A stretch of 48,611 bases of DNA, taken from assembly GCA_002269645.1 (NCBI GenBank), contig NIVC01001844.1, positions 1-48,611 on the forward strand, read 5' to 3'. Below the pieces are notes generated by a model. That model was not told the origin of the DNA. It saw only the letters and a program-made list of their open reading frames with translations, and did no database searches. The DNA is from Macrostomum lignano. Its lineage: Eukaryota. Numbering within the stretch: position 1 is the stretch's first letter; each line of letters starts with the position of its first letter. The position numbers and the translations under genes are program-made. This document shows, one piece after another, positions 2,895 to 48,611 of the stretch.

Positions 2895-3029
2895 CTGCGC
2901 GCGTCGAAGGAACAGGCATTGGGAGTTGAAATATGAATAAACAACTCATCCTAATATTCAAATCTCACACTAAAATCAACATGTTACCCTAGAATCAGAA
3001 TTTCACCTGTGATCAGAATCTTATTCTAA

Positions 3030-4470
3030 AAACAGAATCTCACTCTGAGATCAGGATCTTACCCTGAGACCAGAGTCTCACCCCGAGACCATAATCTTAC
3101 TCTGAGACTATAACCTTACCCTGAGATTATAATCTCACCCTGAGACTAGAATTTCACCCCAGAATCAGAATCTCACCCTGAGACCAGAATCTCACCCTGA
3201 GACCAGAATCTCACACTGAGACCAGAATCTCACCCTGAGACCAGAATCTCACCCTGAGACCAGAATCTCACCCTGAGACCAGAATCTCACCCTGAGACCA
3301 GAATCTCACCCTGAGACCAAAATCTCACCCCGAGACCAGAATCTTACTCTGAGACTATAACCTTACCCTGAGATTATAATCTCACCCTGAGACTAGAATT
3401 TCACCCCAGAATCAGAATCTCACCCTGAGACCAGAATCTCACCCTGAGACCAGAATCTCACACTGAGACCAGAATCTCACCCTGAGACCAGAATCTCACC
3501 CTGAGACCAGAATCTCACCCTGAGACCAGAATCTCACCCTGAGACCAGAATCTCACCCTGAGACCAGAATCTCACCCTGAGACCAGAATCTCACCCTGAG
3601 ACCAAAATCTCACCCCGAGACCAGAATCTTACTCTGAGATTTTAATCTAACCCTGAGAATCTCACCCGAGACTAAATTTCACCCCGGAATAAGAATCTCA
3701 CACTACAATCAGAGTCTCACCCTGAGATCAGAATCTCACCCTGAGACCAGAATCTCACCCTGAGACCAGAATCTCACCCTGAGACCAGAATCTCACCCTG
3801 AGACCAGAATCTCACCCTGAGACCAGAATCTCACCCTGAGACCAGAATCTCACCCTGAGACCAGAATCTCACCCTGAGACCAAAATCTCACCCCGAGACC
3901 AGAATCTTACTCTGAGACTATAACCTTACCCTGAGATTATAATCTCACCCTGAGACTAGAATTTCACCCCAGAATCAGAATCTCACCCTGAGACCAGAAT
4001 CTCACCCTGAGACCAGAATCTCACACTGAGACCAGAATCTCACCCTGAGACCAGAATCTCACCCTGAGACCAGAATCTCACCCTGAGACCAGAATCTCAC
4101 CCTGAGACCAGAATCTCACCCTGAGACCAGAATCTCACCCTGAGACCAAAATCTCACCCCGAGACCAGAATCTTACTCTGAGATTTTAATCTAACCCTGA
4201 GAATCTCACCCGAGACTAAATTTCACCCCGGAATAAGAATCTCACACTACAATCAGAGTTTCACCCTGAGATCAGAATCTTAGCTAGAAGCATAGTTTGA
4301 GCCTGGAATTAGAAACTCATCCTGAGATCACAATCTTTATAAAAAAATCACTCTTAGATCGAATCTCATGCTAGAAACGAATTCAACCCTAAGATTGAAT
4401 CTCACCTTGAGACCAGAATCTCACCCTGAGACAATAATCACACCCTGAGACAATAATCTCACCCTATGAT
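3030..4470. repeat. 19-bp minisatellite (CTGAGACCAGAATCTCACC) with blocks of variant units, in ASNSD1 intron 3
   Basis: Period 19 (3241, 3260). Variant blocks recur and the edges are degenerate. Confidence 0.95.
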
Positions 4471-5090: not shown

Positions 5091-6730
5091 ATAGATGCAA
5101 GAATAGAATGGATTGCTAATCTAGCCAATGATAGATGCAGGAATTGAATGGATTGCTAATCTAGCCAATGATTGATGCAGGAATAGAATGGATTGCTAAT
5201 CTAGCCAATGATTGATGCAGGAATTGAATGGATTGCTAATCTAGCCAATGATTGATGCAGGAATTGAATGGATTGCTAATCTAGCCTATGATTGATGCAG
5301 GAATTGAATGGATTGCTAATCTAGCCTATGATTGATGCAAGAATTGAATGGATTGCTAATCTAGCCAATGATTGATGCAAGAATAGAATGGATTGCTAAT
5401 CTAGCCTATGATTGATGCAGGAATTGAATGGATTGCTAATCTAGCCAATGATTGATGCAGGAATTGAATGGATTGCTAATCTAGCCAATGATTGATGCAA
5501 GAATTGAATGGATTGCCAATCTAACCAATGATTGATGCAGGAATTGAATGGATTGCTAATCTAGCCAATGATTGATGCAGGAATTGAATGGATTGCTAAT
5601 CTAGCCTATGATTGATGCAGGAATTGAATGGATTGCTAATCTAGCCTATGATTGATGCAAGAATTGAATGGATTGCTAATCTAGCCAATGATTGATGCAA
5701 GAATAGAATGGATTGCTAATCTAGCCTATGATTGATGCAGGAATTGAATGGATTGCTAATCTAGCCTATGATTGATGCAGGAATTGAATGGATTGCTAAT
5801 CTAGCCAATGATTGATGCAAGAATTGAATGGATTGCCAATCTAACCAATGATTGATGCAGGAATTGAATGGATTGCTAATCTAGCCTATGATTGATGCAG
5901 GAATTGAATGGATTGCTAATCTAGCCAATGATTGATGCAAGAATTGAATGGATTGCCAATCTAACCAATGATTGATGCAGGAATTGAATGGATTGCTAAT
6001 CTAGCCTATGATTGATGCAAGAATTGAATGGATTGCTAATCTAACCAATGATTGATGCAGGAATTGAATGGATTGCTAATCTAGCCAATGATTGATGCAG
6101 GAATTGAATGGATTGCTAATCTAGCCTATGATTGATGCAAGAATAGAATGGATTGCTAATCTAGCCAATGATTGATGCAGGAATTGAATGGATTGCTAAT
6201 CTAGCCTATGATTGATGCAAGAATAGAATGGATTGCTAATCTAGCCAATGATTGATGCAGGAATTGAATGGATTGCTAATCTAGCCAATGATTGATGCAG
6301 GAATTGAATGGATTGCTAATCTAGCCAATGATTGATGCAGGAATTGAATGGATTGCTAATCTAGCCAATGATAGATGCAAGAATAGAATGGATTGCTAAT
6401 CTAGCCAATGATTGATGCAGGAATAGAATGGATTGCTAATCTAGCCAATGATAGTTGCAGGAATTGAATGGATTGCTAATCTAGCCAATGATAGTTGCAA
6501 GAATAGAATGGATTGCTAATCTAGCCAATGATAGATGCAGGAATAGAATGGATTGCTAATCTAGCCAATGATAGATGCAGGAATTGAATGGATTGCTAAT
6601 CTAGCCAATGATAGTTGCAAGAATAGAATGGATTGCTAATCTAGCCAATGATAGATGCAGGAATTGAATGGATTGCTAATCTAGCCAATGATAGTTGCAG
6701 GAATTGAATGGATTGCTAATCTAGCCAATC
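5091..6730. repeat. 40-bp minisatellite (GAATTGAATGGATTGCTAATCTAGCCAATGATTGATGCAG), ~41 copies, in ASNSD1 intron 3
   Basis: Exact period 40, substitutions only. Confidence 0.97.
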
Positions 6731-11815: not shown

Positions 11816-12329
11816 TACGGATATAATTTAGTGACCGTTTCTTAAACTAATATGGAAAACACACGGCAAAGCAGTTACTTTCACTTGAAAGCAATACAGT
11901 ACCCGACCGCAGTGATAACAGTGATTTATGATAGGCCGATTTCTTTACAATTCAGAGCTTTACGGTTTCGTGTTCGTAATTCTTGACCTGTCGGCGAGTT
12001 CAGAAAGAACAAACAAATTTCAAGACGGAGGGCAGCAATTCTGAACAGTTCAAATCGCAGGGAAGAGTTTAGCACAGCTACCTTTGGTTAGCAACTAAAA
12101 CAGTTGACATGGACATAACCTTCAAACGGGGCAACTGCTTCCCCTGCACAGAATTCCTCTATTGCCGACTGAAGGGTCAACTGCGCTGGGCTGCTGCTAA
12201 TACGATTTTTCAAACCGAACAGGCGAAAAAAACTGCGGAATTCTGATTCAACATGGCTATTTGAGGCGGACTTGGGAGCCGTTTTTGGGCGCATTTGCAA
12301 ATCTCAGGGGCGGGTTCGCGAACGATTTT

Positions 12330-13945
12330 GGGGGAGGGGGCGGATTTGGATTCGATGCGACTTTTGAGAGGGGCGGAATTGGATGCGATTTTTGAGAGGG
12401 GGCGGATTTAGATGCGATTTTTTAGAGGGGGCGGATTTAGATGCGATTTTTGGGAGGGGGCGGATTTAGATGCGATTTTTGGGAGGGGGCGGATTTGGAT
12501 GCGATTTTTGGGAGGGGACGGATTTAGATGCGATTTTTGGGAGGGGGCGGATTTGGATACGATTTTTGGGAGGGGGCGGATTTAGATGCGATTTTTGGGA
12601 GGGGGGCGGATTTGGATACGATTTTTGGGAGGGGGCGGATTTGGATACGATTTTTGGGAGGGGGCGGATTTGGATGCGATTTTTGGGAGGGGGCGGATTT
12701 GGATACGATTTTTGGGAGGGGGCGGATTTGGATACGATTTTTGGGAGGGGGCGGATTTGGATACGATTTTTGGGAGGGGGCGGATTTGGATACGATTTTT
12801 GGGAGGGGACGGATTTAGATGCGATTTTTGAGAGGGGGCGGATTTGGATACGATTTTTGGGAGGGGACGGATTTAGATGCGATTTTTTAGAGGGGGCGGA
12901 TTTGGATGCGATTTTTTAGGGGGGCGGATTTAGATGCGATTTTGAGAGGGGCGGAATTGGATGCGATTTTTGAGAGGGGGCGGATTTAGATGCGATTTTT
13001 GGGAGGGGGCGGATTTAGATGCGATTTTTGGGAGGGGGCGGATTTGGATACGATTTTTGGGAGGGGGCTGATTTGGATACGATTTTTGGGAGGGGACGGA
13101 TTTAGATGCGATTTTTTAGAGGGGGCGGATTTAGATGCGATTTTTGGGAGGGGGCGGATTTGGATGCGATTTTTGGGAGGGGGCGGATTTGGATGCGATT
13201 TTTGGGAGGGGGCGGATTTGGATGCGATTTTTGGGAGGGGGCGGATTTGGATGCGATTTTTAGGAGGGGCGGATTTAGATGCGATTTTTGGGAGGGGCGG
13301 ATTTGGATGCGATTTTTGGGAGGGGCGGATTTTGGTGAGACTTTATGGGAAGGGGCGGATTTAGATGAGATTTTTGGGAGGGGGCGGATTTAGATGGGAT
13401 TTAAGGAGGGGCGGATTTGGATGCGTCGCGATTTTTGGGAGGGGGCGGATTTGGATGCGATTTTTGAGAGGGGGCGGATTTGGATACGACTTTTGAGAGG
13501 GGGCGAATTTGGATGCGATTTTTGGGAGGGGCGGATTTTGGTGAGACTTTATGGGAAGGGGCGGATTTAGATGAGATTTAAGGAGGGGCGGATTTGGATG
13601 CGATTTTTTTAGAGGGGGCGGATTTAGATGCGATTTTTGGGAGGGGGCGGATTTAGATGCGATTTTTGAGAGGGGGCGGATTTAGATGCGATTTTTTAGA
13701 GGGGGCGGATTTAGATGCGATTTTTGAGAGGGGCGGATTTAGATGCGATTTTTGGGAGGGGTGGATTTGGATGCGAATTTTGGGAGGGGGCGGATTTGGA
13801 AGCGATTTTTGGGAGATGGCGGATTTGGATGCAATTTTTGGGAGGGGCGGATTTGGATGCAATTTTTGGGAGGGGCGGATTTGGATGCGATTTTTGGGAG
13901 GGGGCGGATTTAGATGCGATTTAGATGCGATTTTTTGGAGGGGCG
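12330..13945. repeat. G-rich ~29-bp minisatellite (GGGAGGGGGCGGATTTGGATGCGATTTTT)
   Basis: Direct reading. Shares GGGGCGGATTT with the 7312-7640 array. Confidence 0.96.
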
Positions 13946-15019: not shown

Positions 15020-15406
15020 TCAGTTGGCCGCCTTATCGCGAGCTGCCGTCCTGCCCAGCACTGATTTGCTCTGCATAGGCGGCTCCACCAGCAGCAGCTT
15101 CTCCGTCTGGCCAACCAGCCGACATGTTGGACCGGCGGCGCCTTCCCCGGCGTCCAACAGCTCAAAGTACATCACGGTGCCAGCGGCGTCTTTGTAGCGG
15201 CCGCGCAGATCCAGCCGGCCCTGTTGAAGCCGCGGCGCCGCCGAGTCGAGGCCGGAGACGCGGCAGCCGCCGCCGCCGGCCAGCAGCAGGCCGCCGTGCT
15301 CGACGTGCAGCAGCCGCTCGTCCACCGCCTCCCAGTTCGCGGCTTCGTCCGGCTGGTGCGTCTGCCCGGATTGCGACTGGAATGCCAGAAGTGCGATGTG
15401 CGCTTG
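15020..15406 (-). CDS. GTF3C6: General transcription factor IIIC subunit 6-like coding exon; no ATG upstream of the domain, in-frame acceptors at 15406 and 15376
   Basis: DERLLHVEHGG...CRVSGLDSAAPRLQQG...RGRYKDAAGTVMYFE...GQTEKLL resembles the TFIIIC_sub6 pattern of human EEQLVLVELSG...CKVLGIDTERPILQVD...GEYEDTLGTCVIFE...CHTMKKL (compared from memory). Ends TGA TGA. Confidence 0.75.
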   Translation of the reverse strand, partial: QAHIALLAFQSQSGQTHQPDEAANWEAVDERLLHVEHGGLLLAGGGGCRVSGLDSAAPRLQQGRLDLRGRYKDAAGTVMYFELLDAGEGAAGPTCRLVGQTEKLLLVEPPMQSKSVLGRTAARDKAAN

Positions 15407-15424
15407 CTGTAGAAACTAAGAGGA

Positions 15425-15490
15425 CTGGGGTGGTAGCGCGTATAGACCGTTGCGTCAGGGCTCTCAGGTTTGATTCCGCACCGTGGCCAC
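15425..15490 (+). mobile_element. tRNA-like SINE head (degenerate A box; B-box-like GGTTTGATTCC at 15467-15477)
   Basis: A/B-box spacing. Homologous to the inverted copy at 16570-16660. Confidence 0.55.
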
Positions 15491-15499
15491 AGTTGGTCA

Positions 15500-15628
15500 G
15501 TCAGCTAGTTTTTTAGTTAGTCAATTAGTCAGTTAGTTGGTTCGTTAGTTATTTAATTAACTAGCGTTAGTTAGTTAGTCAGTTGGTTAGTTAGTTAGTT
15601 AGTTAGTCAGTTAGTTAGTTAGTTAGTC

Positions 15629-15671
<43 letters not shown>

Positions 15672-15780
15672 CAGTCAGTTAGTTAGTTAGTCAGTCAGTT
15701 AGTTAGTTAGTTAGTTAGTCAGTTAGTTAGTCAGTTAGTTAGTTAGTTAGTCAGTTAGTTATTCAGTTAGTTAGTTAGTC

Positions 15781-15811
<31 letters not shown>

Positions 15812-15812
15812 C

Positions 15813-15853
<41 letters not shown>

Positions 15854-15996
15854 TCCAGTTAGTTAGTCAGTTAGTTAGTTAGTTAGTTAGTTATTTAGTT
15901 ATTTAGTTAATTAGTTAGTCAGTCAGTTAGTTAGTTAGTCAGTCAGTTAGTTAGTTAGTTAGTCAATTAGTTAGTTAGTTAGTTAGTTAGTCAGTC

Positions 15997-16029
<33 letters not shown>

Positions 16030-16092
16030 TTTAGTTAATTAGTTAGTCAGTCAGTTAGTTAGTTAGTTATTTAGTTAATTAGTTAGTCAGTC

Positions 16093-16127
<35 letters not shown>

Positions 16128-16128
16128 C

Positions 16129-16159
<31 letters not shown>

Positions 16160-16348
16160 CAGTTAGTTAATTAGTTAGTCAGTCAGTTAGTTAGTTAGTT
16201 AGTCAGTTAGTTAGTCAGTCAGTTAGTTATTCAGTTAGTTAGTTAGTCAGTTAGTTAGTTAGTCAGTCAGTTAGTTAGTTAGTTATTTAGTTAATTAGTT
16301 AGTCAGTCAGTTAGTTAGTTAGTTATTTAGTTAATTAGTTAGTCAGTC

Positions 16349-16379
<31 letters not shown>

Positions 16380-16558
16380 CAGTTAGTTAATTAGTTAGTC
16401 AGTCAGTTAGTTAGTTAGTTAGTCAGTTAGTTAGTTATTCAGTTAGTTATTCAGTTAGTTAGTTAGTCAGTTAGTTAGTCAGTCAGTTAGTTATTCAGTT
16501 AGTTAGTTAGTCAGTTAGTTAGTTAGTCAGTTAGTTAGTTAGTCAGTCAGTTAATCAG
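15500..16558. repeat. (GTTA)n/(GTCA)n microsatellite, ~1.05 kb
   Basis: Direct reading. Confidence 0.98.
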
Positions 16559-16569
16559 TTGCAGTCGGG

Positions 16570-16660
16570 CCCGTTCCGCTGACCCTGAGCACGCGGCAGG
16601 AATCGAACCCGAGAGAACCCTAATGCAAGAATCGGACGCGTTCAAAACCGCAAAGAATCA
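16570..16660 (-). mobile_element. tRNA-like SINE head with perfect B box GGTTCGATTCC (16609-16599)
   Basis: B box followed by GCGTGCTCAGGGTCAGC, a motif also seen near 25093 beside another SINE. Confidence 0.6.
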
Positions 16661-17399
16661 GCTTAGAAAGCCTAGAAAAGTTAAAAAAACATCTCTTAGA
16701 AGCCCTAGCCAACTTTTTTGCGCGAAAAATCGCCCTGTTTTAAAGTTACATTTTTTTGCACAAGAAAAAAAAACAAGAAAATTCCGCTTACGCAAGCGAA
16801 TGTTATTAAGCAAAAAGCATTTGTCAGCCCACATAAACAGACCCGAGCTAGGCTAGGTTGCACGCTCGCTCGGTGCTTCATCGGTCAAAGTAATCTAATT
16901 ATAGCTCCCAGCCGCCGCGGCTGCCCTTCCTCATCCAAGAAGAAGCGCGGCAGGAAATGAACTGAACAACCAACAAGAGTGAAATGGAAAACACACAAAA
17001 GCAACACTTGCCAGAGGATATTAACTAATAAATCATTTTCGACAAACCCGCTAGACGGACACAGGTGATTTCCAATATCCTACTTTATACTCCTTTTTAC
17101 TACGAGCTGGTAAGAGCAGATTTTTTATCAAAATCGTTTATTTATTTGAAACAAGTTGACCGAATATTTACTAGGCTCTTAGGCCAGCTTGTATAACTAC
17201 GCGATAGCAAGCAATATAAGGCAAAAAGCAACATGGCAATCGAATAAAAATCCTAAAGCGATTCTACAATACTACTACAAGTAGAAAAGTAAGCAAAATA
17301 GACGAAAATGTGTTGTTTAATATGAAAAACAAGGTTCAGAGTCAAACAATTTTATTTATTCAATTTACAAATGCTCGTTACAAATGGCAATGCTCGAGG

Positions 17400-17535
17400 A
17401 GAGATGATGATGGAGGGCGATTCTTGGTGATGATGGAGGGCGATTCTTGATGATGAAAGGTGATTCTTGGTGATGATGGAGGGCGATTCTTGGTGATGAT
17501 GGAGGGCGATTATTGGTGATGATGGAGGGCGATTC
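17400..17535. repeat. 23-bp minisatellite (GATGATGGAGGGCGATTCTTGGT), ~5 copies
   Basis: Period 23 (17405, 17428). Confidence 0.88.
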
Positions 17536-17804
17536 TTAAGGGCGATGAAAGGCAATTTTTTTATGATTATAAAGCTGTTTCTAAGGGCGATGAAAAGCGA
17601 TTATTGATTTATGAAGCTCAAATGTGATTCTGGAATAATGCGGGGGAGCGATTTCTAAGGTTAAAAAGGCCGATGAAGCTCAGCGCTATTAGCGCATCAA
17701 ACTCGAACTCGGAAATGGCAAAAGTACATCAAACAAGCAAGTTGCTGTCACTAAATAAGCAGTCAAATTCCGCTATCTCAAGTTCGGCAACGGCTGCTCA
17801 AATA

Positions 17805-18200
17805 CTACTTGATCTTAGGCGCGTAGCCGGATTTGTAGCTCTTCATATAAGCCGGCAGGGCGTCGTCCATGCCGCGGGCTGTCCGACGCTTCGGCTGGCC
17901 GGGCGTTGCTAAGCAACCAGGCGGCAAATTTGGCATGCGCGGATACGGGATATTGTAGTGCAGAGCCAAATTAATGCGCGACTCCGCCTCCGCAATGTGA
18001 GACTCGATGACGGCCGGGTCTGACAGGGACTTGTGCTGGCGGAACAGGGTGCCAGCCTCTGTCCGGATGTAGGCCGCCTCCGTGGCCGGGTCTGCCACAC
18101 CTGGCCGGCCAGGCCACTGCCTGGCCAAACGAAGGATCTGACGGTACAGGCTGAGCACTCGCTGGCGCTGGCTGCTCAGCGAAGCCGCTGATACTGACAT
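17805..18200 (-). CDS. LYRM1: LYR motif-containing protein 1 (131 aa, intronless CDS)
   Basis: VLSLYRQILRLARQW...YIRTEAGTLFRQHKSL...RINLALHYNIPYPR matches human LYRM1 VLGLYRSIFRLARKW...YILNEARTLFRKNKNL...RIEIGLHYKIPYPR. Confidence 0.93.
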   Translation of the reverse strand: MSVSAASLSSQRQRVLSLYRQILRLARQWPGRPGVADPATEAAYIRTEAGTLFRQHKSLSDPAVIESHIAEAESRINLALHYNIPYPRMPNLPPGCLATPGQPKRRTARGMDDALPAYMKSYKSGYAPKIK

Positions 18201-18221
18201 CTTTTTAGTGTTTTACAGCTT

Positions 18222-18237
18222 TAACTAACTGAAATAG
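18222..18237 (-). promoter_or_regulatory. Splice or trans-splice acceptor TATTTCAG|TTAG, 28 nt upstream of the LYRM1 ATG
   Basis: AG at 18230-18229; same octamer as before ASNSD1. Confidence 0.45.
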
Positions 18238-18469
18238 TACAATACCATATGCTTGTTGGATAGCCAGTTTCCATAGCAACTAATATTTGTTAGCTCAGAT
18301 TGACAACAAAATTCACTGCAGACACACAGTTGTAACTGTTTTACTCAAACAAATTTAAAACATTGTTTCTAATTAGTGAGCCAACAAAAAAAATTATGAT
18401 ATTTTTTCAAGTATTTATAAACAAGATATTCGAAATTGGTTTTTTTAAAGACTTCTCATCTGGACTGCA

Positions 18470-36630: not shown

Positions 36631-37815
36631 TCACTGCTCGCAGCGGCACCTGCAGGCCCTGCTGTAAATTCTGCGCAGCTCCTCTCTGAACTTCGAGTTC
36701 ATCATGGCGTAGACGAAAAAGTTCAGCGACGTGTTCAAATAGAAAATGCGGTGCAGCGGCGAGTCCGGCAGCAGCTTGAAGTTGATGAGGATCATCGGCA
36801 GCATGCTGCCGTAGAACAGCACGGTGGCGCCGAACAGCATCCAGGCCAGCTTCTTGGGGAACCATGACTCGGTGGTGGCGGCGGCAGCGGCGGCGGCGGC
36901 GGTCGCCGACTGCGGCGGCAGCGCATTGCTGACGAAGCTGCTGCTGGGACACTCGGAGATGCCGTTAAACCCGGTTGGACCGTCGGCTGTCACCTGAAGC
37001 GAGCAGCTGGTCGGTTTTAAAGATGTTTCCAAAGCGTAGCTGGCGGTACCTTGAAGATTTTTGTCGCCAGCGCCGTCGCCACCGCCGCCGAGGTCCCCGC
37101 AGTTGCTGGTCGCGCCGACTTCGTCCGCCCTGGACAGCAGCGCCAGCGTCTGCTTGGTGACTTTGCGCTTCGAACTGCGCCGCCTCTCCATGGAGGCCAC
37201 GAAGGTGAAAATTCTGATATAAAGCGACATGACAACCAGCACTGACAGGGTGCCGAGTGCGCCGTAGAAGTACAGCAGGTAGGACTCCAGCTGGAGCTTC
37301 AGGCCGCACTGGTCTTCAATTAGGTAGTGGCTTGTCACGTTGCACACCTCTAGGAGCAGAAGACTCAGCGCGGCGGCGAACAGGGCGCATAGGGTCTTCT
37401 TGTAGGTAAGGCCTTGCTGACTGGCCTTCACGATGCACAGGTAGCGGTCCACTGCGATGAATACCAGAATCCAGGCCTCCATCTCGAACGCCGCATACCT
37501 GGACGACAGAATCACGGTGCTGAACCAGTGATTAGTGGCCTTCAGCTCGTACTTGCTGGCCAGGTAGTCATTGTACACCCGGTAGCAGTCGGTGGGCAGC
37601 ACCACTGCCGATATAAACAGATCCATGGCCGACAGTACCGTGATGAGGAAGCGCAGACTCTTCTCCCGACTGGAGGCGAACACGAGGATGACGTGGATGT
37701 TGCCGAACAGTCCGAGCACGCCCAGGGTGGAGTAGAAAGCCAGAGAACCGATCGCTACTAGGGGAGACTCCGGCAGAGAGTGATCCGTGCACTGCGCATT
37801 TGTTGTGTTGCCCAT
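36631..37815 (-). CDS. Orphan class A (rhodopsin-like) GPCR, 394 aa, intronless
   Basis: Seven hydrophobic segments: TM1 GLFGN, TM2 LSAMDL, TM3 IAVDRY, TM7 NTSLNFFVY and helix 8 FREEL. The first ATG is at 37815 (MGNTT, with an N-glycosylation sequon); the ORF track start at 37869 is TTG. Confidence 0.92.
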
Positions 37816-38059
37816 TCGGAGCTGCTGGCTCGCTCGGGTCAGCGCGCTGCTCGTCTGTTTTCGTCGCAATTCGGGACGGGACTTTCAGAAACCATCGGTT
37901 TTTATAGGCCGCACTGCACACGGCCAGGCAGGGTCGTCTTGCGGGATTGGCCGCCCAGCGAGCCCTCCAATGCGGCCGCGAAACTGCTGGGAGTGCATTT
38001 TTGACACTGTCATACAGTAAATTAGATACGGCGACGTGAAAAAGGAGACGGATAAACTC

Positions 38060-44794: not shown

Positions 44795-46498
44795 AGATAC
44801 TAAGAGGACAGACACTGAGACGACACTAGGACAGACACTAGGACAGACACTAAGACAGATACTAGGACAGACACTAGGACAGACACTAGGACAGACACTA
44901 AGACAGATACTAGGACAGACACTAGGACAGACACTAGGACAGACACTAAGACAGACACTAAGACAGACACTAGGACAGACACTAAGACAGACACTAAGAC
45001 AGATACTAGGACAGACACTAAGACAGATACTAGGACAGACACTAGGACAGACACTAGGACAGACACTAAGACAGACACTAAGACAGACACTAGGACACAC
45101 ACTAAGACAGACACTAAGACAGACACTAAGACAGACACTAAGACAGACACTAAGACAGACACTAAGACAGACACTAGGACAGACACTAAGACAGACACTA
45201 GGACAGACACTAGGACAGACACTAAGACAGACACTAAGACAGACACTAAGACAGACACTAAGACAGACACTAAGACAGACACTAGGACAGACACTAAGAC
45301 AGACACTAGGACACACACTAAGACAGACACTAAGACAGATACTAGGACAGACACTAAGACAGATACTAGGACAGACACTAGGACAGACACTAGGACAGAC
45401 ACTAAGACAGACACTAAGACAGACACTAGGACACACACTAAGACAGACACTAAGACAGACACTAGGACAGACACTAAGACAGACACTAAGAAAGATACTA
45501 GAACAGACACTAAGACAGACACTAGGACAGACACTAAGACAGACACTAAGACAGACACTAGGACAGACACTAAGACAGACACTAAGACAGACACTAAGAC
45601 AGACACTAGGACAGACACTAAGACAGACACTAGGACACACACTAAGACAGACACTAAGACAGATACTAGGACAGACACTAAGACAGATACTAGGACAGAC
45701 ACTAGGACAGACACTAGGACAGACACTAAGACAGACACTAAGACAGACACTAAGACAGACACTAAGACAGACACTAGGACAGACACTAAGACAGACACTA
45801 AGAAAGATACTAGAACAGACACTAAGACAGATACTAGGACAGACACTAGGACAGATACTAGGACAGACACTAGGACAGACACTAGGACAGACACTAAGAC
45901 AGACACTAAGACAGACACTAAGACAGACACTAAGACAGACACTAGGACGCACACTAAGACAGACACTAAGACAGACACTAAGACAGACACTAAGACAGAC
46001 ACTAAGACAGACACTAAGACAGACACTAAGACAGACACTAGGACAGACACTAAGACAGACACTAGGACACACACTAAGACAGACACTAAGAAAGATACTA
46101 GAACAGACACTAAGACAGATACTAGGACAGACACTAGGACAGATACTAGGACAGACACTAGGACAGACACTAGGACAGACACTAAGACAGACACTAAGAC
46201 AGACACTAAGACAGACACTAAGACAGACACTAGGACACACACTAAGACAGACACTAAGACAGACACTAAGACAGACACTAAGACAGACACTAAGACAGAC
46301 ACTAAGACAGACACTAGGACAGACACTAAGACAGACACTAGGACAGACACTAGGACAGACACTAAGACAGACACTAAGACAGACACTAGGACAGACACTA
46401 AGACAGACACTAGGATACACACTAAGACAGACACTAAGACAGATACTAGAACAGACACTAAGACAGACACTAGGACAGACACTAGGACAGACACAGAC
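44795..46498. repeat. 12-bp minisatellite (ACACTARGACAG), ~140 copies
   Basis: Direct reading. ORFs 44789-46420 and 44800-46518 are repeat translations. Confidence 0.97.
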
Positions 46499-46499
46499 A

Positions 46500-48611
46500 T
46501 ATATATATAAGGACGCAAAGATATTATGGTGGGCGTCTTGCGCGCACGCGCTCGCAGAAGAGACGAGAAGGACAGTTTGTGGCAGATTGTGGGGTCAGGT
46601 TAATGGCTTGAAGGTCAGACTCAAGCGTGGCGGTCAGCGTGGCGGTCCGGCCTTGGCCCCGTCGGAGACGCTCGGTTGGCTGATGTAGCAAGGTTAGCGC
46701 CAGCGGGTTTTGCTCCCCTCTGCCGTAGCTGCGGAGGCAGTGGCCGACGAGCATTAGCCGGCGCCGCTGGAGAGTGGCACTGAGCTGAGGCACACGGGCT
46801 CTCGCCATCAGCAGGTCCGTCGGCAGCCGCTCTGGGTAATGGATGCCAAGGGCGAACCGCAGCAGCGATCGGTAGGCAGCGTCCAGGGCTCGGGACCTCG
46901 AGTCGGTCATTGGCACTGCCTCCAGTCCGTACAGGAAGATTGGCTCTACGGCAGCGCGGAACAGGCGCATCTTCAGGTCGTCGTTGGCAGCTGAGCTGAA
47001 GACCTCCCTGAGGAGATGAGCCGCGCGCCAGGCCTGTGACCTCCGGTCGGCGATGATGGAGTCAGGGCTCATCACGAAGGAGCCCAGGTACCGGAAGTCT
47101 CTGCAGGCTGAAATGACTTGTCCATCTGGTAGGGTCAGGATTGGTGCTGCATCGGTGCCCACGTGCAGCACTTCCGTCTTGCGTGCGTTGATTTGCAGTC
47201 CGACTCGGGCGCTCTCCTCATAGAGTCTCGAGAGCGCTCTCTGGGCGGCAGTCGGCTGCGGCACAGCAGGGCGATGTCGTCGGCGTACGCGAGGGCGGGC
47301 AAAGGGGCAGCACCGCGGCGGGAGCTCCGGCGTGACGCCAGCAGGTAGCTGTCCTCCTCTGTGAGGCTTCGGCGCAGCACGTAGTCGACGACAAGGATGA
47401 AGAGCAGTGGAGCCAACGTGTCACCTTGGAGGACTCCAGAGCTGGTGCAGAAGTCCTCAGTTGGGCCATCGCTGGTTTGGACAAAGGCTTTGCTGTTGTT
47501 GTAGAGGTCCATCACTGCAACGATAAGAGCCGGAGGGACGCCATAGTGTTCGAGCAGCCACGCGATCGCGCGCCGGCACACTGAGTCAAAAGCTTTGCGG
47601 AAGTCCACAAAGACAATTGACACAGCTCTTTGGTGAGTTTTACAGGCCTCGACGACTGCTCGAAGGGCTGCAATCTGCTCTGTTGTCGAGCGACCGGGCC
47701 TGAAGCCACTTTGGAGGCTCAGGATCATTTGGTTGAGGCCAGGCAGCAGCCGATTACGCAGTATAGCATTGAGCAGCTTAGCCAGAGTGCATTCCAGAGC
47801 GATGCCGCGTTGGTTGTCCAGACTGGTGGATGCGCCCTTCTTGGGGATGGAGACGATCTTAGAGGTCGCCAGCTGTCAGCAGCAGTAGCACCTGGGTTGC
47901 CTCCAAGCGGACAGTGCTTGTTGAGCACAGCTGTGATGTCCTGTGTCAGCTCTGGCAGCTTGAGCACCCTGGGTGGAATGCCATCTACTCCGCGGCAGCG
48001 TCGGGGCGCATGGTTCTGAGCACTCGGTTCACCTCGTAGGCAGTCAGCGGGCCGGAGTTAAAAGCCGAGGGCTCGGCCGGGGTAAAGTTTTCGATCGGTA
48101 GCAAATCAGCAGAGGGTGGTGAGGCGTTGAGCACATTGTGATAGTGAGTGGCCAGCAGGGCTTTGCGATGGTGTATAGACTCAGCACCTACAGCGGCATT
48201 GGGCCTCTGCTTCCTGCCAGTCAGGCGGGTTGATGGCGCGCCAGGCCGCTGTGTGCCGGCAGTTGTCTGTTGCTAGTTGAATCTCAGCAACAGCCTCCTG
48301 GACAAAGGCTTCGGTCCTCCGGGCATGCGTGTCGCGAAGATGGGCCCGGGCTGTTTCAGCCTGCTCACTGTCTTGGCCAAAGACTGCGGTTGTTCTTTGC
48401 ACGTCGCGCCTAGCGATGGAGATCTCCTCGTCGGAGTCCCAGGCGGCTTTTGGCTGGTGCGGTGTTCGTTTTGGTAGGGTCGAGGCAGCTTTCTCAACAG
48501 CTCTGGTGAAGGCGTCCGCCGATTCATTCAGGGCCGGAGTAGCATTTTGCAGTTTTTCCATGAACGCACTGCAAGTGTGTCTGGGTTTCTCAGATCTGCC
48601 CAGAGGGGTGT
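46500..48611 (-). mobile_element. Non-LTR retrotransposon (RTE/RTEX-like) ORF2 with RT domain and 3' end; continues beyond the window
   Basis: KIVSIPKKG...RGIAL...QSGFRPGRST...FVDFRKAFDSV...GVLQGDTLAPLLF...LAYADDIAL...FRYLGS...RRRLMLVGHC. Stop at 46524-46526. Four 1-nt frameshifts (~48228, ~47992, ~47867, ~47255). Confidence 0.95.

What the first reader, a model, noticed from the sequence alone, without database searches (positions are those of the whole stretch)
15020..15410. TFIIIC subunit gene with no genomic start codon: the spliced leader's terminal AUG may supply Met1
Seen: the GTF3C6-like frame has no ATG before its conserved domain; the first ATG (MYFE) is late in the domain. Two phase-0 acceptors precede it (tttctacag|CAA at 15406, ttccag|TCG at 15376). 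Upstream lie a SINE, 1 kb of (GTTA)n and another SINE, and I found no convincing ATG-bearing exon. Established: flatworm SL exons end in a conserved 3'-terminal AUG, shown in schistosomes to be usable as initiator Met. SL-AUG joined at 15376 gives M-SQSGQTHQPDEAANWEAVDERLLHVE..., an N-terminus of about the length of human GTF3C6. Inference: expression of a Pol III factor would then strictly depend on trans-splicing.
Basis: partly seen in the sequence, partly recalled or inferred. Interest (0 to 1): 0.78.

Follow-up and report, generated by a model that had tools for sequence, protein, structure and literature searches.

The report
Flatworm TFIIIC gene lacking own start codon
A small RNA polymerase III factor gene (GTF3C6-like) in the flatworm Macrostomum lignano has no start codon of its own and most likely borrows the AUG at the end of the spliced leader, a mechanism already known in flatworms and not shown directly here.

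Summary
The window is contig NIVC01001844.1 of the Macrostomum lignano Mlig_3_7 assembly. The sequence observation holds. A minus-strand ORF (15376..15020) passes Pfam's threshold for the TFIIIC subunit 6 domain. Its frame runs from an in-frame TAG (15418-15416) to the first ATG (15172-15170, mid-domain) with no ATG between. Two acceptors fit the published M. lignano trans-splice motif YTNCAG and are in phase 0 (15406, 15376). The species' single spliced leader (SL) ends in ATG. A second, homeologous copy has the same layout and an identical ORF, while flanks differ by 2-4 %. The deposited annotation leaves both copies 5'-partial, although neighbouring genes start with ATG. Codon composition suggests coding starts near 15376. 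The 2.4 kb upstream holds no strong donor. The one GTRAG donor (16791) does close an in-frame ATG exon, but that exon looks non-coding. I could reach no transcript data, so trans-splicing at this gene remains inferred. SL-AUG initiation is well documented in flatworms and is noted for Macrostomum, and a Taenia ortholog keeps its own ATG. Verdict: a plausible new instance of a known mechanism, of low novelty.

The parts
15020..15376 (-). GTF3C6-like (TFIIIC subunit 6) coding exon: 118 codons plus TGA, with no initiator ATG of its own
   Evidence: Translation. Pfam PF10419 above the gathering score. phmmer, PDB and fold hits to GTF3C6. GC3 is 0.83, like other coding ORFs here. 0/357 differences from the homeolog.
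15377..15382 (-). Favoured 3' splice acceptor TTCCAG (junction before 15376, phase 0)
   Evidence: Matches the published M. lignano trans-splice motif [T/C]TNCAG. The GC3 change and the only inter-copy SNP lie just upstream of it.
15407..15412 (-). Alternative acceptor CTACAG (junction before 15406, phase 0), preceded by the best pyrimidine tract
   Evidence: The 30 nt it would add have GC3 0.54 and carry an Ala/Glu difference between the copies.
15362..15364 (-). Third in-frame CAG. The deposited CDS of the homeolog (P0002) starts exactly after it
   Evidence: It fits the motif poorly (GGGCAG).
15416..15418 (-). In-frame TAG that closes the frame upstream
15332..15334 (-). Trp codon, the first invariant residue of the TFIIIC_sub6 domain (W-E motif)
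   Evidence: Alignments A1-A3
15170..15172 (-). First genomic in-frame ATG (MYFE), in the middle of the domain
15420..15490 (+). tRNA-like segment (box-B-like GGTTTGATTCC) abutting the acceptor region. SINE identity is unverified
   Evidence: Sequence. No ARAGORN or Rfam tRNA call and no other copy.
15491..16553 (.). (AGTT)n microsatellite inside the putative outron or intergenic spacer: 1.06 kb here, about 3 kb in the homeolog
   Evidence: TRF. L002 sequence.
16555..16660 (-). Second tRNA-like segment (GGGTTCGATTCC), inverted relative to the first
16792..16881 (-). Rival feature: a candidate cis 5' exon. ATG 16881 gives MKHRASVQPSLARVCLCGLTNAFCLITFAC, then the donor gcttgc|GTAAG (G at 16791), in phase 0
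   Evidence: The only GTRAG donor in 2.4 kb, conserved in L002. The generic donor score is -1.4 bits. GC3 is 0.47, non-coding-like.
17805..18200 (-). Upstream same-strand neighbour: an intact LYR-motif (Complex1_LYR) gene with its own ATG. Possible first cistron
   Evidence: AATAAA at 17360-17355.

Best explanation
This is the M. lignano gene for TFIIIC subunit 6 (GTF3C6/TFIIIC35-like). Its whole coding sequence lies in one GC-rich exon that has no initiator codon.

Most likely, the pre-mRNA is trans-spliced to the 35-nt spliced leader (...TTATTGCATG). That pre-mRNA starts either at the gene's own promoter in the 16.6-17.3 kb interval or as a read-through from the upstream LYR-motif gene. The junction would be at the TTCCAG|TCG acceptor (15376), or less likely at 15406 or 15361. 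The leader's terminal AUG then lies in frame and serves as Met1, giving M-SQSGQTHQPDEAANWEAVDERLLHVE... (119 aa).

Shown: the gene's identity, the lack of an ATG, the phase-0 consensus acceptors, selective conservation of the ORF, and that the species' SL ends in AUG. Inferred: that this mRNA is trans-spliced, which acceptor is used, and that translation starts at the SL AUG.
For: 1. Organism and SL. The contig is NIVC01001844.1 of GCA_002269645.1, which is M. lignano Mlig_3_7. Its SL is CGGTCTCTTACTGCGAAGACTCAATTTATTGCATG. 30-39 % of genes are trans-spliced, and these are enriched for conserved genes.
2. No ATG lies between TAG 15418 and MYFE 15172. The domain starts at W 15334.
3. Between 17804 and 15300 the sense strand has only three YTNCAG motifs. 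Two of them are the phase-0 sites at 15406 and 15376.
4. The homeolog on NIVC01000214.1 has the same layout. The ORF shows 0/357 differences, the neighbouring LYRM CDS 7/393, and the flanks about 3 %. This argues for a functional gene.
5. GC3 is 0.83 downstream of 15376 and 0.54 in the 13 codons upstream. The only local SNP (15384, Ala/Glu) lies upstream of 15376.
6. The deposited annotation gives both copies as 5'-partial single-exon CDSs (P0001, P0002). LYRM, the 389-aa gene and the Asn synthase gene start with ATG.
7. No donor scores above 1.6 bits in the 2.4 kb upstream.
8. With the SL Met, the N-terminus is about as long as the human one: query residue 16 aligns to human residue 16.
9. 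Precedent: Cheng et al. 2006 as cited; 143 of 187 SL-bearing E. granulosus clusters; and a Macrostomum genome paper that calls the final SL ATG a translation start codon.
Against: - No transcript, EST or read evidence for an SL junction at this gene could be obtained.
- A single GTAAG donor at 16791 closes a 30-codon ATG-initiated frame in phase 0 and is conserved in both copies. A cis-spliced start is therefore not excluded.
- Phase-0 AGs are expected here anyway, because they are CAG (Gln) codons.
- The 28-codon open stretch upstream of the domain is not statistically remarkable.
- The annotated 5' ends (15337; the equivalent of 15361 in L002) coincide with neither of the two best acceptors.
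- Flatworm relatives carry their own ATG and longer N-termini: the Taenia solium ortholog P0123 in its genome, and P0004, an unnamed transcript from an unidentified organism that I only guess to be a flatworm.
Confidence: 0.6

Rival explanations
1. A conventional cis-spliced 5' exon supplies the ATG. The concrete candidate is ATG 16881 to the donor at 16791 (30 codons, MKHRASVQPSLARVCLCGLTNAFCLITFAC), spliced across the microsatellite-filled intron to 15406 or 15376. The exon could also lie further upstream, beyond the LYRM gene.
For: It is the only GTRAG donor in the interval. It is in phase 0 with an ATG-initiated open frame and is identical in both homeologs. A TATAAT-like motif lies about 20 nt upstream of the ATG. 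Parasitic flatworms often share acceptors between cis- and trans-splicing.
Against: - The exon side of the donor is poor: TGC|GTAAGC scores -1.4 bits on a generic donor matrix.
- GC3 is 0.47, against 0.73-0.83 for coding ORFs of this contig.
- The peptide is hydrophobic and signal-peptide-like. No ortholog has anything similar, and a nuclear TFIIIC subunit would not be expected to carry it.
- About one such candidate per interval is expected by chance (my estimate: roughly 2.4 GTRAG sites, each with a 0.25 chance of an in-frame ATG).
- The RNA-seq-guided annotation did not join any such exon.
Confidence: 0.15
2. The mRNA is translated from a near-cognate codon in the exon (CTG 15388-15386 or ACG 15361-15359), without any AUG.
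For: In-frame CTG and ACG codons lie upstream of the conserved Trp. The homeolog's annotated protein starts at the ACG codon.
Against: Both codons have a pyrimidine at -3, a poor context on the standard Kozak rule. Non-AUG initiation as the sole start of a housekeeping gene is rare. An AUG-donating SL and consensus acceptors offer a simpler route.
Confidence: 0.07
3. The locus is not a functional gene. It would be a decaying or retro-copied GTF3C6 fragment, and the missing ATG simply reflects that. The identity of the two copies would come from gene conversion or recent duplication.
For: - The CDS has no intron, whereas the Taenia ortholog has one inside the domain.
- It is embedded in repeats.
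- Zero synonymous differences is even lower than the 3-4 expected from LYRM and the flanks. That is compatible with gene conversion rather than selection.
- No transcript-derived proteins appear in the collection.
Against: - The 118-codon frame is intact in both copies, with coding-type GC3 of 0.83.
- All residues invariant across the family are kept.
- It is the only TFIIIC_sub6-type protein from this genome that the protein collection returned.
- Differences resume immediately outside the ORF on both sides.
- The annotators had transcript support for a model here (describes the method).
Confidence: 0.08

Closest known systems
Flatworm mRNAs that use the spliced leader's 3'-terminal AUG as initiator Met (Cheng, Cohen, Ndegwa & Davis 2006, J Biol Chem 281:733; Schistosoma, Echinococcus, Taenia)
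   Same: The SL ends in AUG. The acceptor is in frame with an ORF that has no suitable AUG of its own. The N-terminus matches the length of orthologs only if the SL Met is used. This is the criterion applied to E. granulosus cDNAs in PMC3510090.
   Different: The SL junction is not observed here; it is inferred from genomic sequence. The species is a free-living, early-branching macrostomorph. In the papers I could search, SL-AUG use in this group appears only as a remark (PMC10468722) and has not been catalogued.
GTF3C6 / TFIIIC35 (human, PDB 8clk chain F) and Sfc7 (S. pombe, PDB 4bjj chain B): the triple-barrel dimerisation subunit of TFIIIC tauA
   Same: Pfam PF10419 above threshold. The W-E...LDS..P.Q.G...G.Y.D..GT..F signature is kept. 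These two chains are the best fold matches.
   Different: It is much shorter (119 aa against 213 in human) and lacks the acidic C-terminal tail. It has a Gly-rich loop (LLLAGGGGC) and is only 27-38 % identical. The structure model has low confidence (pLDDT 55.9).
M. lignano SL-resolved operons (Ustyantsev & Berezikov 2021, PMC8629364)
   Same: There is a same-strand upstream gene (LYRM). The spacer is made mostly of simple repeats. Repeat-adjusted, it is roughly 0.9-1.2 kb, close to that paper's 1-kb cut-off.
   Different: The raw spacing is 2.4 kb here and 4.8 kb in the homeolog. The trans-splicing status of both genes is unknown. A separate promoter in 16.6-17.3 kb is equally possible.
Taenia solium ortholog TsM_000591600 (P0123)
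   Same: It is a flatworm TFIIIC_sub6 protein with the same DEWE-V-D-L motif. It also sits close behind a same-strand gene for a mitochondrial protein (Tim29, 98 nt upstream).
   Different: It has its own genomic ATG, a 24-aa N-terminal extension and an intron inside the domain.

Membership tests
TFIIIC subunit 6 (GTF3C6/Sfc7; Pfam PF10419) | Sequence match to the family profile above the curated threshold | tested here: met
   24.1 bits against a gathering score of 22.7, E = 3.6e-5, profile positions 28-91 of 98
TFIIIC subunit 6 (GTF3C6/Sfc7; Pfam PF10419) | The nearest detectable relatives are named GTF3C6 proteins and nothing else | tested here: met
   An exhaustive phmmer search found only P0003, P0004 and P0005, all PF10419; P0005 is named GTF3C6 and P0003 a TFIIIC triple barrel domain protein. 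Human GTF3C6 8clk_F was the only PDB hit. The Taenia ortholog P0123 was also found.
TFIIIC subunit 6 (GTF3C6/Sfc7; Pfam PF10419) | Triple-barrel fold | tested here: inconclusive
   The AlphaFold2 model is all-beta but low confidence (pLDDT 55.9, pTM 0.36). Top Foldseek hits are 8clk_F (E = 1.2e-3) and 4bjj_B, then other triple-barrel modules, with TM-scores of only 0.36-0.49.
TFIIIC subunit 6 (GTF3C6/Sfc7; Pfam PF10419) | Heterodimer with TFIIIC63/GTF3C5 within tauA | not testable with these tools
   Needs biochemistry or a complex prediction with the M. lignano GTF3C5 sequence, which I do not hold.
SL-AUG-initiated trans-spliced flatworm mRNA | The species has an SL whose last three bases are AUG | tested here: met
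   The M. lignano SL is ...TTATTGCATG (PMC8629364). PMC10468722 calls the final ATG a translation start codon. No SL RNA gene lies in this window.
SL-AUG-initiated trans-spliced flatworm mRNA | The mature mRNA carries the SL joined at an AG acceptor of this gene | not testable with these tools
   No M. lignano transcript contigs or SL-read tables were reachable. Only motif evidence is available: YTNCAG at 15406 and 15376.
SL-AUG-initiated trans-spliced flatworm mRNA | The junction puts the SL AUG in frame with the main ORF, with no intervening stop | tested here: met
   15415, 15406, 15376, 15361 and 15352 are all in phase 0 and downstream of TAG 15418.
SL-AUG-initiated trans-spliced flatworm mRNA | No genomic AUG can give an N-terminus matching the orthologs | tested here: met
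   Within the exon the first ATG is mid-domain. Upstream there are only weak-donor, non-coding-like candidates. An exon outside 15.4-17.8 kb is not excluded.
SL-AUG-initiated trans-spliced flatworm mRNA | Translation actually starts at the SL AUG | not testable with these tools
   Needs Ribo-seq, N-terminal proteomics or reporter assays.
M. lignano operon (polycistron resolved by the SL) | Same-strand neighbours, repeat-adjusted spacing under 1 kb, and a trans-spliced downstream gene | tested here: inconclusive
   Same strand: yes. From the LYRM stop at 17805 to 15376 is 2428 nt. Subtracting 1196 nt of tandem arrays gives about 1.2 kb. Measured from the AATAAA at 17360-17355, the adjusted figure is about 0.9 kb. 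Trans-splicing status is unknown.

The most novel reading that the evidence does not exclude
Both homeologous copies of M. lignano's only detectable GTF3C6 gene have lost their genomic start codon, which the Taenia solium ortholog retains. Production of this TFIIIC subunit would then depend on SL trans-splicing, possibly as the downstream cistron of a LYRM-GTF3C6 polycistron. That would be a documented case of SL-AUG initiation in a free-living, early-branching flatworm, and would suggest this use of the SL AUG is not confined to the parasitic lineages.
Probability: 0.5. Interest if true: 0.35.

Novelty: new member of a known kind. Interest (0 to 1): 0.25.

Why it matters
If confirmed, this is a clean, easily testable example for M. 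lignano, a transgenic model flatworm, of a housekeeping gene that cannot be translated without the spliced leader. Three practical consequences follow:
- Annotation. The deposited models of this gene are 5'-partial. Pipelines that trim the whole SL, including its ATG, will truncate or drop such genes, as the Macrostomum genome paper PMC10468722 already warns.
- Transgene design. Constructs built from such genes would need an added ATG.
- The question of why flatworm SLs conserve their terminal AUG.

It does not reveal a new mechanism, and it implies no special regulatory link between Pol III transcription and trans-splicing.

Tried and rejected
1. Transcript evidence through the protein collections.
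- The word-indexed search and the cluster look-up returned only the two deposited genome proteins.
- Exact look-ups of the GTF3C6-like and LYRM proteins found only the NCBI contigs and no RNA-seq assemblies.

2. Supplementary tables of Grudniewska 2016 and 2018 and of Wudarski 2017 do not mention GTF3C6. Ustyantsev & Berezikov 2021 has no supplement held.

3. The Cheng et al. 2006 paper itself is not held. I cite it only through papers that cite it.

4. tRNA or SINE identity of the flanking elements could not be shown: ARAGORN found none, Rfam gave only spurious repeat-driven hits, and there are no further copies.

5. An SL RNA gene in the window: none.

6. The fish-dominated profile search confirmed the family but gave no flatworm orthologs. 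A two-sequence profile then found the Taenia ortholog.

7. LYRM-GTF3C6 fusion by splicing. The only decent donor inside the LYRM CDS (18100, 4.2 bits) is in phase 1, so it does not fit the favoured phase-0 acceptors at 15406 and 15376. It could only pair with the motif-poor phase-1 AGs at 15402 and 15342. Rejected as unlikely.

8. The organism of the transcript P0004 (SRR6291255) could not be identified.

9. The structure prediction was too low in confidence to define the N-terminal boundary.

Full report
**What the window is.** An exact-protein look-up places the window as the whole contig NIVC01001844.1 of assembly GCA_002269645.1. NIVC01 is the Macrostomum lignano Mlig_3_7 genome of Wudarski et al. 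2017 (PMC5730564). The contig is unusually rich in tandem arrays.

**Checking the observation.** On the minus strand, the frame that ends at TGA 15022-15020 is open back to an in-frame TAG at 15418-15416. It contains no ATG until 15172-15170 (MYFE).
- The 118 residues encoded from 15376 pass Pfam's curated threshold for PF10419, the TFIIIC subunit 6 triple-barrel domain (24.1 against 22.7 bits).
- An exhaustive phmmer search of 1.84 billion representatives returned only the window's own protein and three PF10419 proteins. Two are from fish, one of them named GTF3C6 by NCBI, and one is an unnamed transcript.
- The only PDB sequence hit is human GTF3C6 (8clk_F). Query residue 16 aligns to human residue 16, so one added Met gives an N-terminus about as long as the human one.
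- Alignments place the first invariant residues at Trp-Glu (TGG 15334-15332). Fish orthologs start only four residues before that Trp. MYFE lies in the middle of the barrel.
- A low-confidence AlphaFold2 model (pLDDT 55.9) still finds 8clk_F and the S. pombe Sfc7 module 4bjj_B as its best fold matches.

I also found phase-0 AGs at 15415, 15361 and 15352. This is partly trivial, because they are CAG glutamine codons.

The (GTTA)n array is real (15491-16553). The flanking 'SINEs' are tRNA-like only by eye. ARAGORN and Rfam call no tRNA, and no other copies exist in the DNA I hold.

**Does the species have the required leader?** Yes. M. lignano has a single 35-nt SL, CGGTCTCTTACTGCGAAGACTCAATTTATTGCATG. 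Between 30 and 39 % of its genes are trans-spliced, and these are enriched for conserved genes. The top motif at trans-splice acceptors is [T/C]TNCAG (PMC8629364 and PMC5730564).

Both 15406 (CTACAG) and 15376 (TTCCAG) fit that motif. On the sense strand the motif occurs only three times between 17804 and 15300. Two of those three are these sites, against 0.15 expected in the 85-nt stretch (P about 0.01).

**Evidence from a second copy.** The protein cluster has one other member, P0002, encoded on NIVC01000214.1 (L002). That locus has the same order of features: LYR-motif gene, 23-mer array, tRNA-like piece, (AACT)n (3 kb there), tRNA-like piece, ORF. The two loci are homeologous rather than allelic.
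- The flanks differ by 2-4 % plus indels. The LYRM CDS differs at 7 of 393 sites, 5 of them synonymous.
- The GTF3C6-like ORF shows 0 differences in 357 nt. Differences resume on both sides of it. At the flank rate about 10 would be expected. The ORF is therefore constrained or homogenised by gene conversion, not decaying.
- The only difference between the in-frame stop and the ORF is C/A at 15384 (Ala or Glu). It lies between the two acceptors.
- GC3 is 0.83 from 15376 onward, within or above the 0.73-0.80 of other coding ORFs on the contig. It is 0.54 in the 13 codons upstream.

The SNP and the GC3 change are weak but concordant. Together they place the start of coding sequence at about 15376.

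**What the depositors' annotation says.** The proteins on record for the two copies do not begin with Met. P0001 starts at AAC 15337. P0002 starts at the ACG that follows gggCAG, equivalent to 15361. The neighbouring LYRM, 389-aa and Asn-synthase genes start with ATG.

The Mlig_3_7 annotation was built from RNA-seq-guided transcripts cut at SL and poly(A) signals, with ORFs called by TransDecoder. I infer that the pipeline found no start codon and no upstream coding exon for this gene. The two copies are identical over the exon, so short reads multi-map. This probably explains the ragged 5' ends.

**Looking for a rival start.** I scanned the sense strand between the LYRM stop (17805) and the ORF.
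- There is exactly one GTRAG donor, gcttgc|GTAAGCGG at 16791. It closes an ATG-initiated frame in phase 0 (ATG 16881; MKHRASVQPSLARVCLCGLTNAFCLITFAC) and another in phase 1. Both are conserved in L002.
The exon side of the donor is poor (-1.4 bits on a generic donor matrix, and no donor in the interval exceeds 1.6 bits). Its GC3 of 0.47 is about 4 SD below the coding level. The peptide is hydrophobic and resembles nothing in the orthologs.
- By my estimate, roughly one such candidate is expected by chance.
- Near-cognate starts (CTG 15388, ACG 15361) have a pyrimidine at -3.
- A splice from inside LYRM is in phase 1, so it could only join the motif-poor AGs at 15402 or 15342, not the favoured acceptors.

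**Comparison with other flatworms.** A two-sequence profile search recovered the Taenia solium ortholog (P0123). It has its own genomic ATG, a 24-residue N-terminal extension and an intron inside the domain. It lies 98 nt behind a same-strand Tim29 gene. An unnamed transcript, P0004, likewise has its own ATG. I could not identify its organism; that it is a flatworm is my guess from its likeness to the Taenia protein. The missing ATG is thus not a general feature of the gene in flatworms, and in M. lignano it looks derived. I could not reach other Macrostomum genomes.

**Mechanism and confidence.** The best explanation (about 0.6) is SL trans-splicing at TTCCAG|TCG (15376), or alternatively at 15406 or 15361. 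The leader's terminal AUG would be Met1 of a 119-aa TFIIIC subunit 6.

The pre-mRNA may start at its own promoter. It may instead be a read-through from LYRM: the spacer, adjusted for repeats, is about 0.9-1.2 kb, near the 1-kb operon cut-off of PMC8629364.

Rivals are a cis-spliced ATG exon (0.15), non-AUG initiation (0.07) and a non-functional locus (0.08). None of the decisive facts, namely the SL junction, the choice of acceptor or the initiation site, could be tested. No M. lignano transcript data were reachable.

**Novelty.** Use of the SL's 3'-terminal AUG as the initiator is established in flatworms.
- The original report is Cheng et al. 2006, cited.
- In E. granulosus, 143 of 187 SL-bearing clusters are full length only with the SL ATG. 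The use is conserved among neodermatans.
- A dedicated tool exists for such ORFs (PMC9851317).
- The M. cliftonense and M. hystrix genome paper explicitly calls the final SL ATG a translation start codon that complicates annotation.

This gene would therefore be a new, unverified member of a known kind. It is useful for annotation and as a test case in a transgenic model, but it would not surprise a specialist. Nothing ties it specially to Pol III regulation.

Noticed in passing
window 15020-15376 vs L002 9986-10342; window 17805-18200 vs L002 4798-5193: The GTF3C6-like ORF is 100 % identical between the two homeologous contigs (0/357). The adjacent LYRM CDS differs at 7/393 sites (5 synonymous) and the flanks differ by 2-4 %. 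Zero synonymous changes is fewer than expected, so local gene conversion is possible.
   Followed up: partly
window 15491-16553 and 17405-17537; L002 6850-9830, 5470-5830 and 5995-6165: The spacer between LYRM and the GTF3C6-like gene differs greatly between the homeologs. The (AACT)n array is 1.06 kb in the window and about 3 kb in L002. The 23-mer array is 133 bp against about 400 bp. A GC-rich insertion of about 170 bp is present only in L002.
   Followed up: partly
window 15420-15490 (+) and 16555-16660 (-): Two tRNA-like segments with box-B-like motifs face each other across the microsatellite. They are not similar to each other beyond the T-arm motif. They have no other copy in the 69 kb held and are not called as tRNA by ARAGORN or Rfam.
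   Followed up: partly
L005 2845-4490 (Taenia solium MIEF01007743.1): The tapeworm GTF3C6 ortholog lies only 98 nt downstream of a same-strand Tim29 gene, an operon-like spacing. In M. lignano the gene also follows a same-strand gene for a small mitochondrial protein (LYRM), although a different one.
   Followed up: no
window 36631-37869 (-): An intact 412-aa ORF with a rhodopsin-family 7TM domain (Pfam 7tm_1, E = 6.8e-13), flanked by long (GACA)n-type arrays.
   Followed up: partly
window 46524-48561 (-): A retrotransposon remnant. Reverse-transcriptase ORF pieces (RVT_1, E = 5e-18) are split over at least two frames, next to a 1.7-kb 12-mer array (44807-46494).
   Followed up: partly
window 1-48611: Tandem arrays of many different unit lengths (3 to 126 bp) occupy a large part of the contig. 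Several are 1-1.7 kb long, for example 2996-4280, 5094-6729, 12323-13922 and 44807-46494. Many mechanical ORFs of over 100 aa are merely translations of these arrays.
   Followed up: no
window 18200-18240 vs L002 4760-4797: Upstream of the LYRM ATG the window has tatttCAG|ttag, where the homeolog has tatttCTGttAG. A YTNCAG-type acceptor about 30 nt before the ATG is thus present in one copy and shifted in the other. LYRM itself may be trans-spliced.
   Followed up: no
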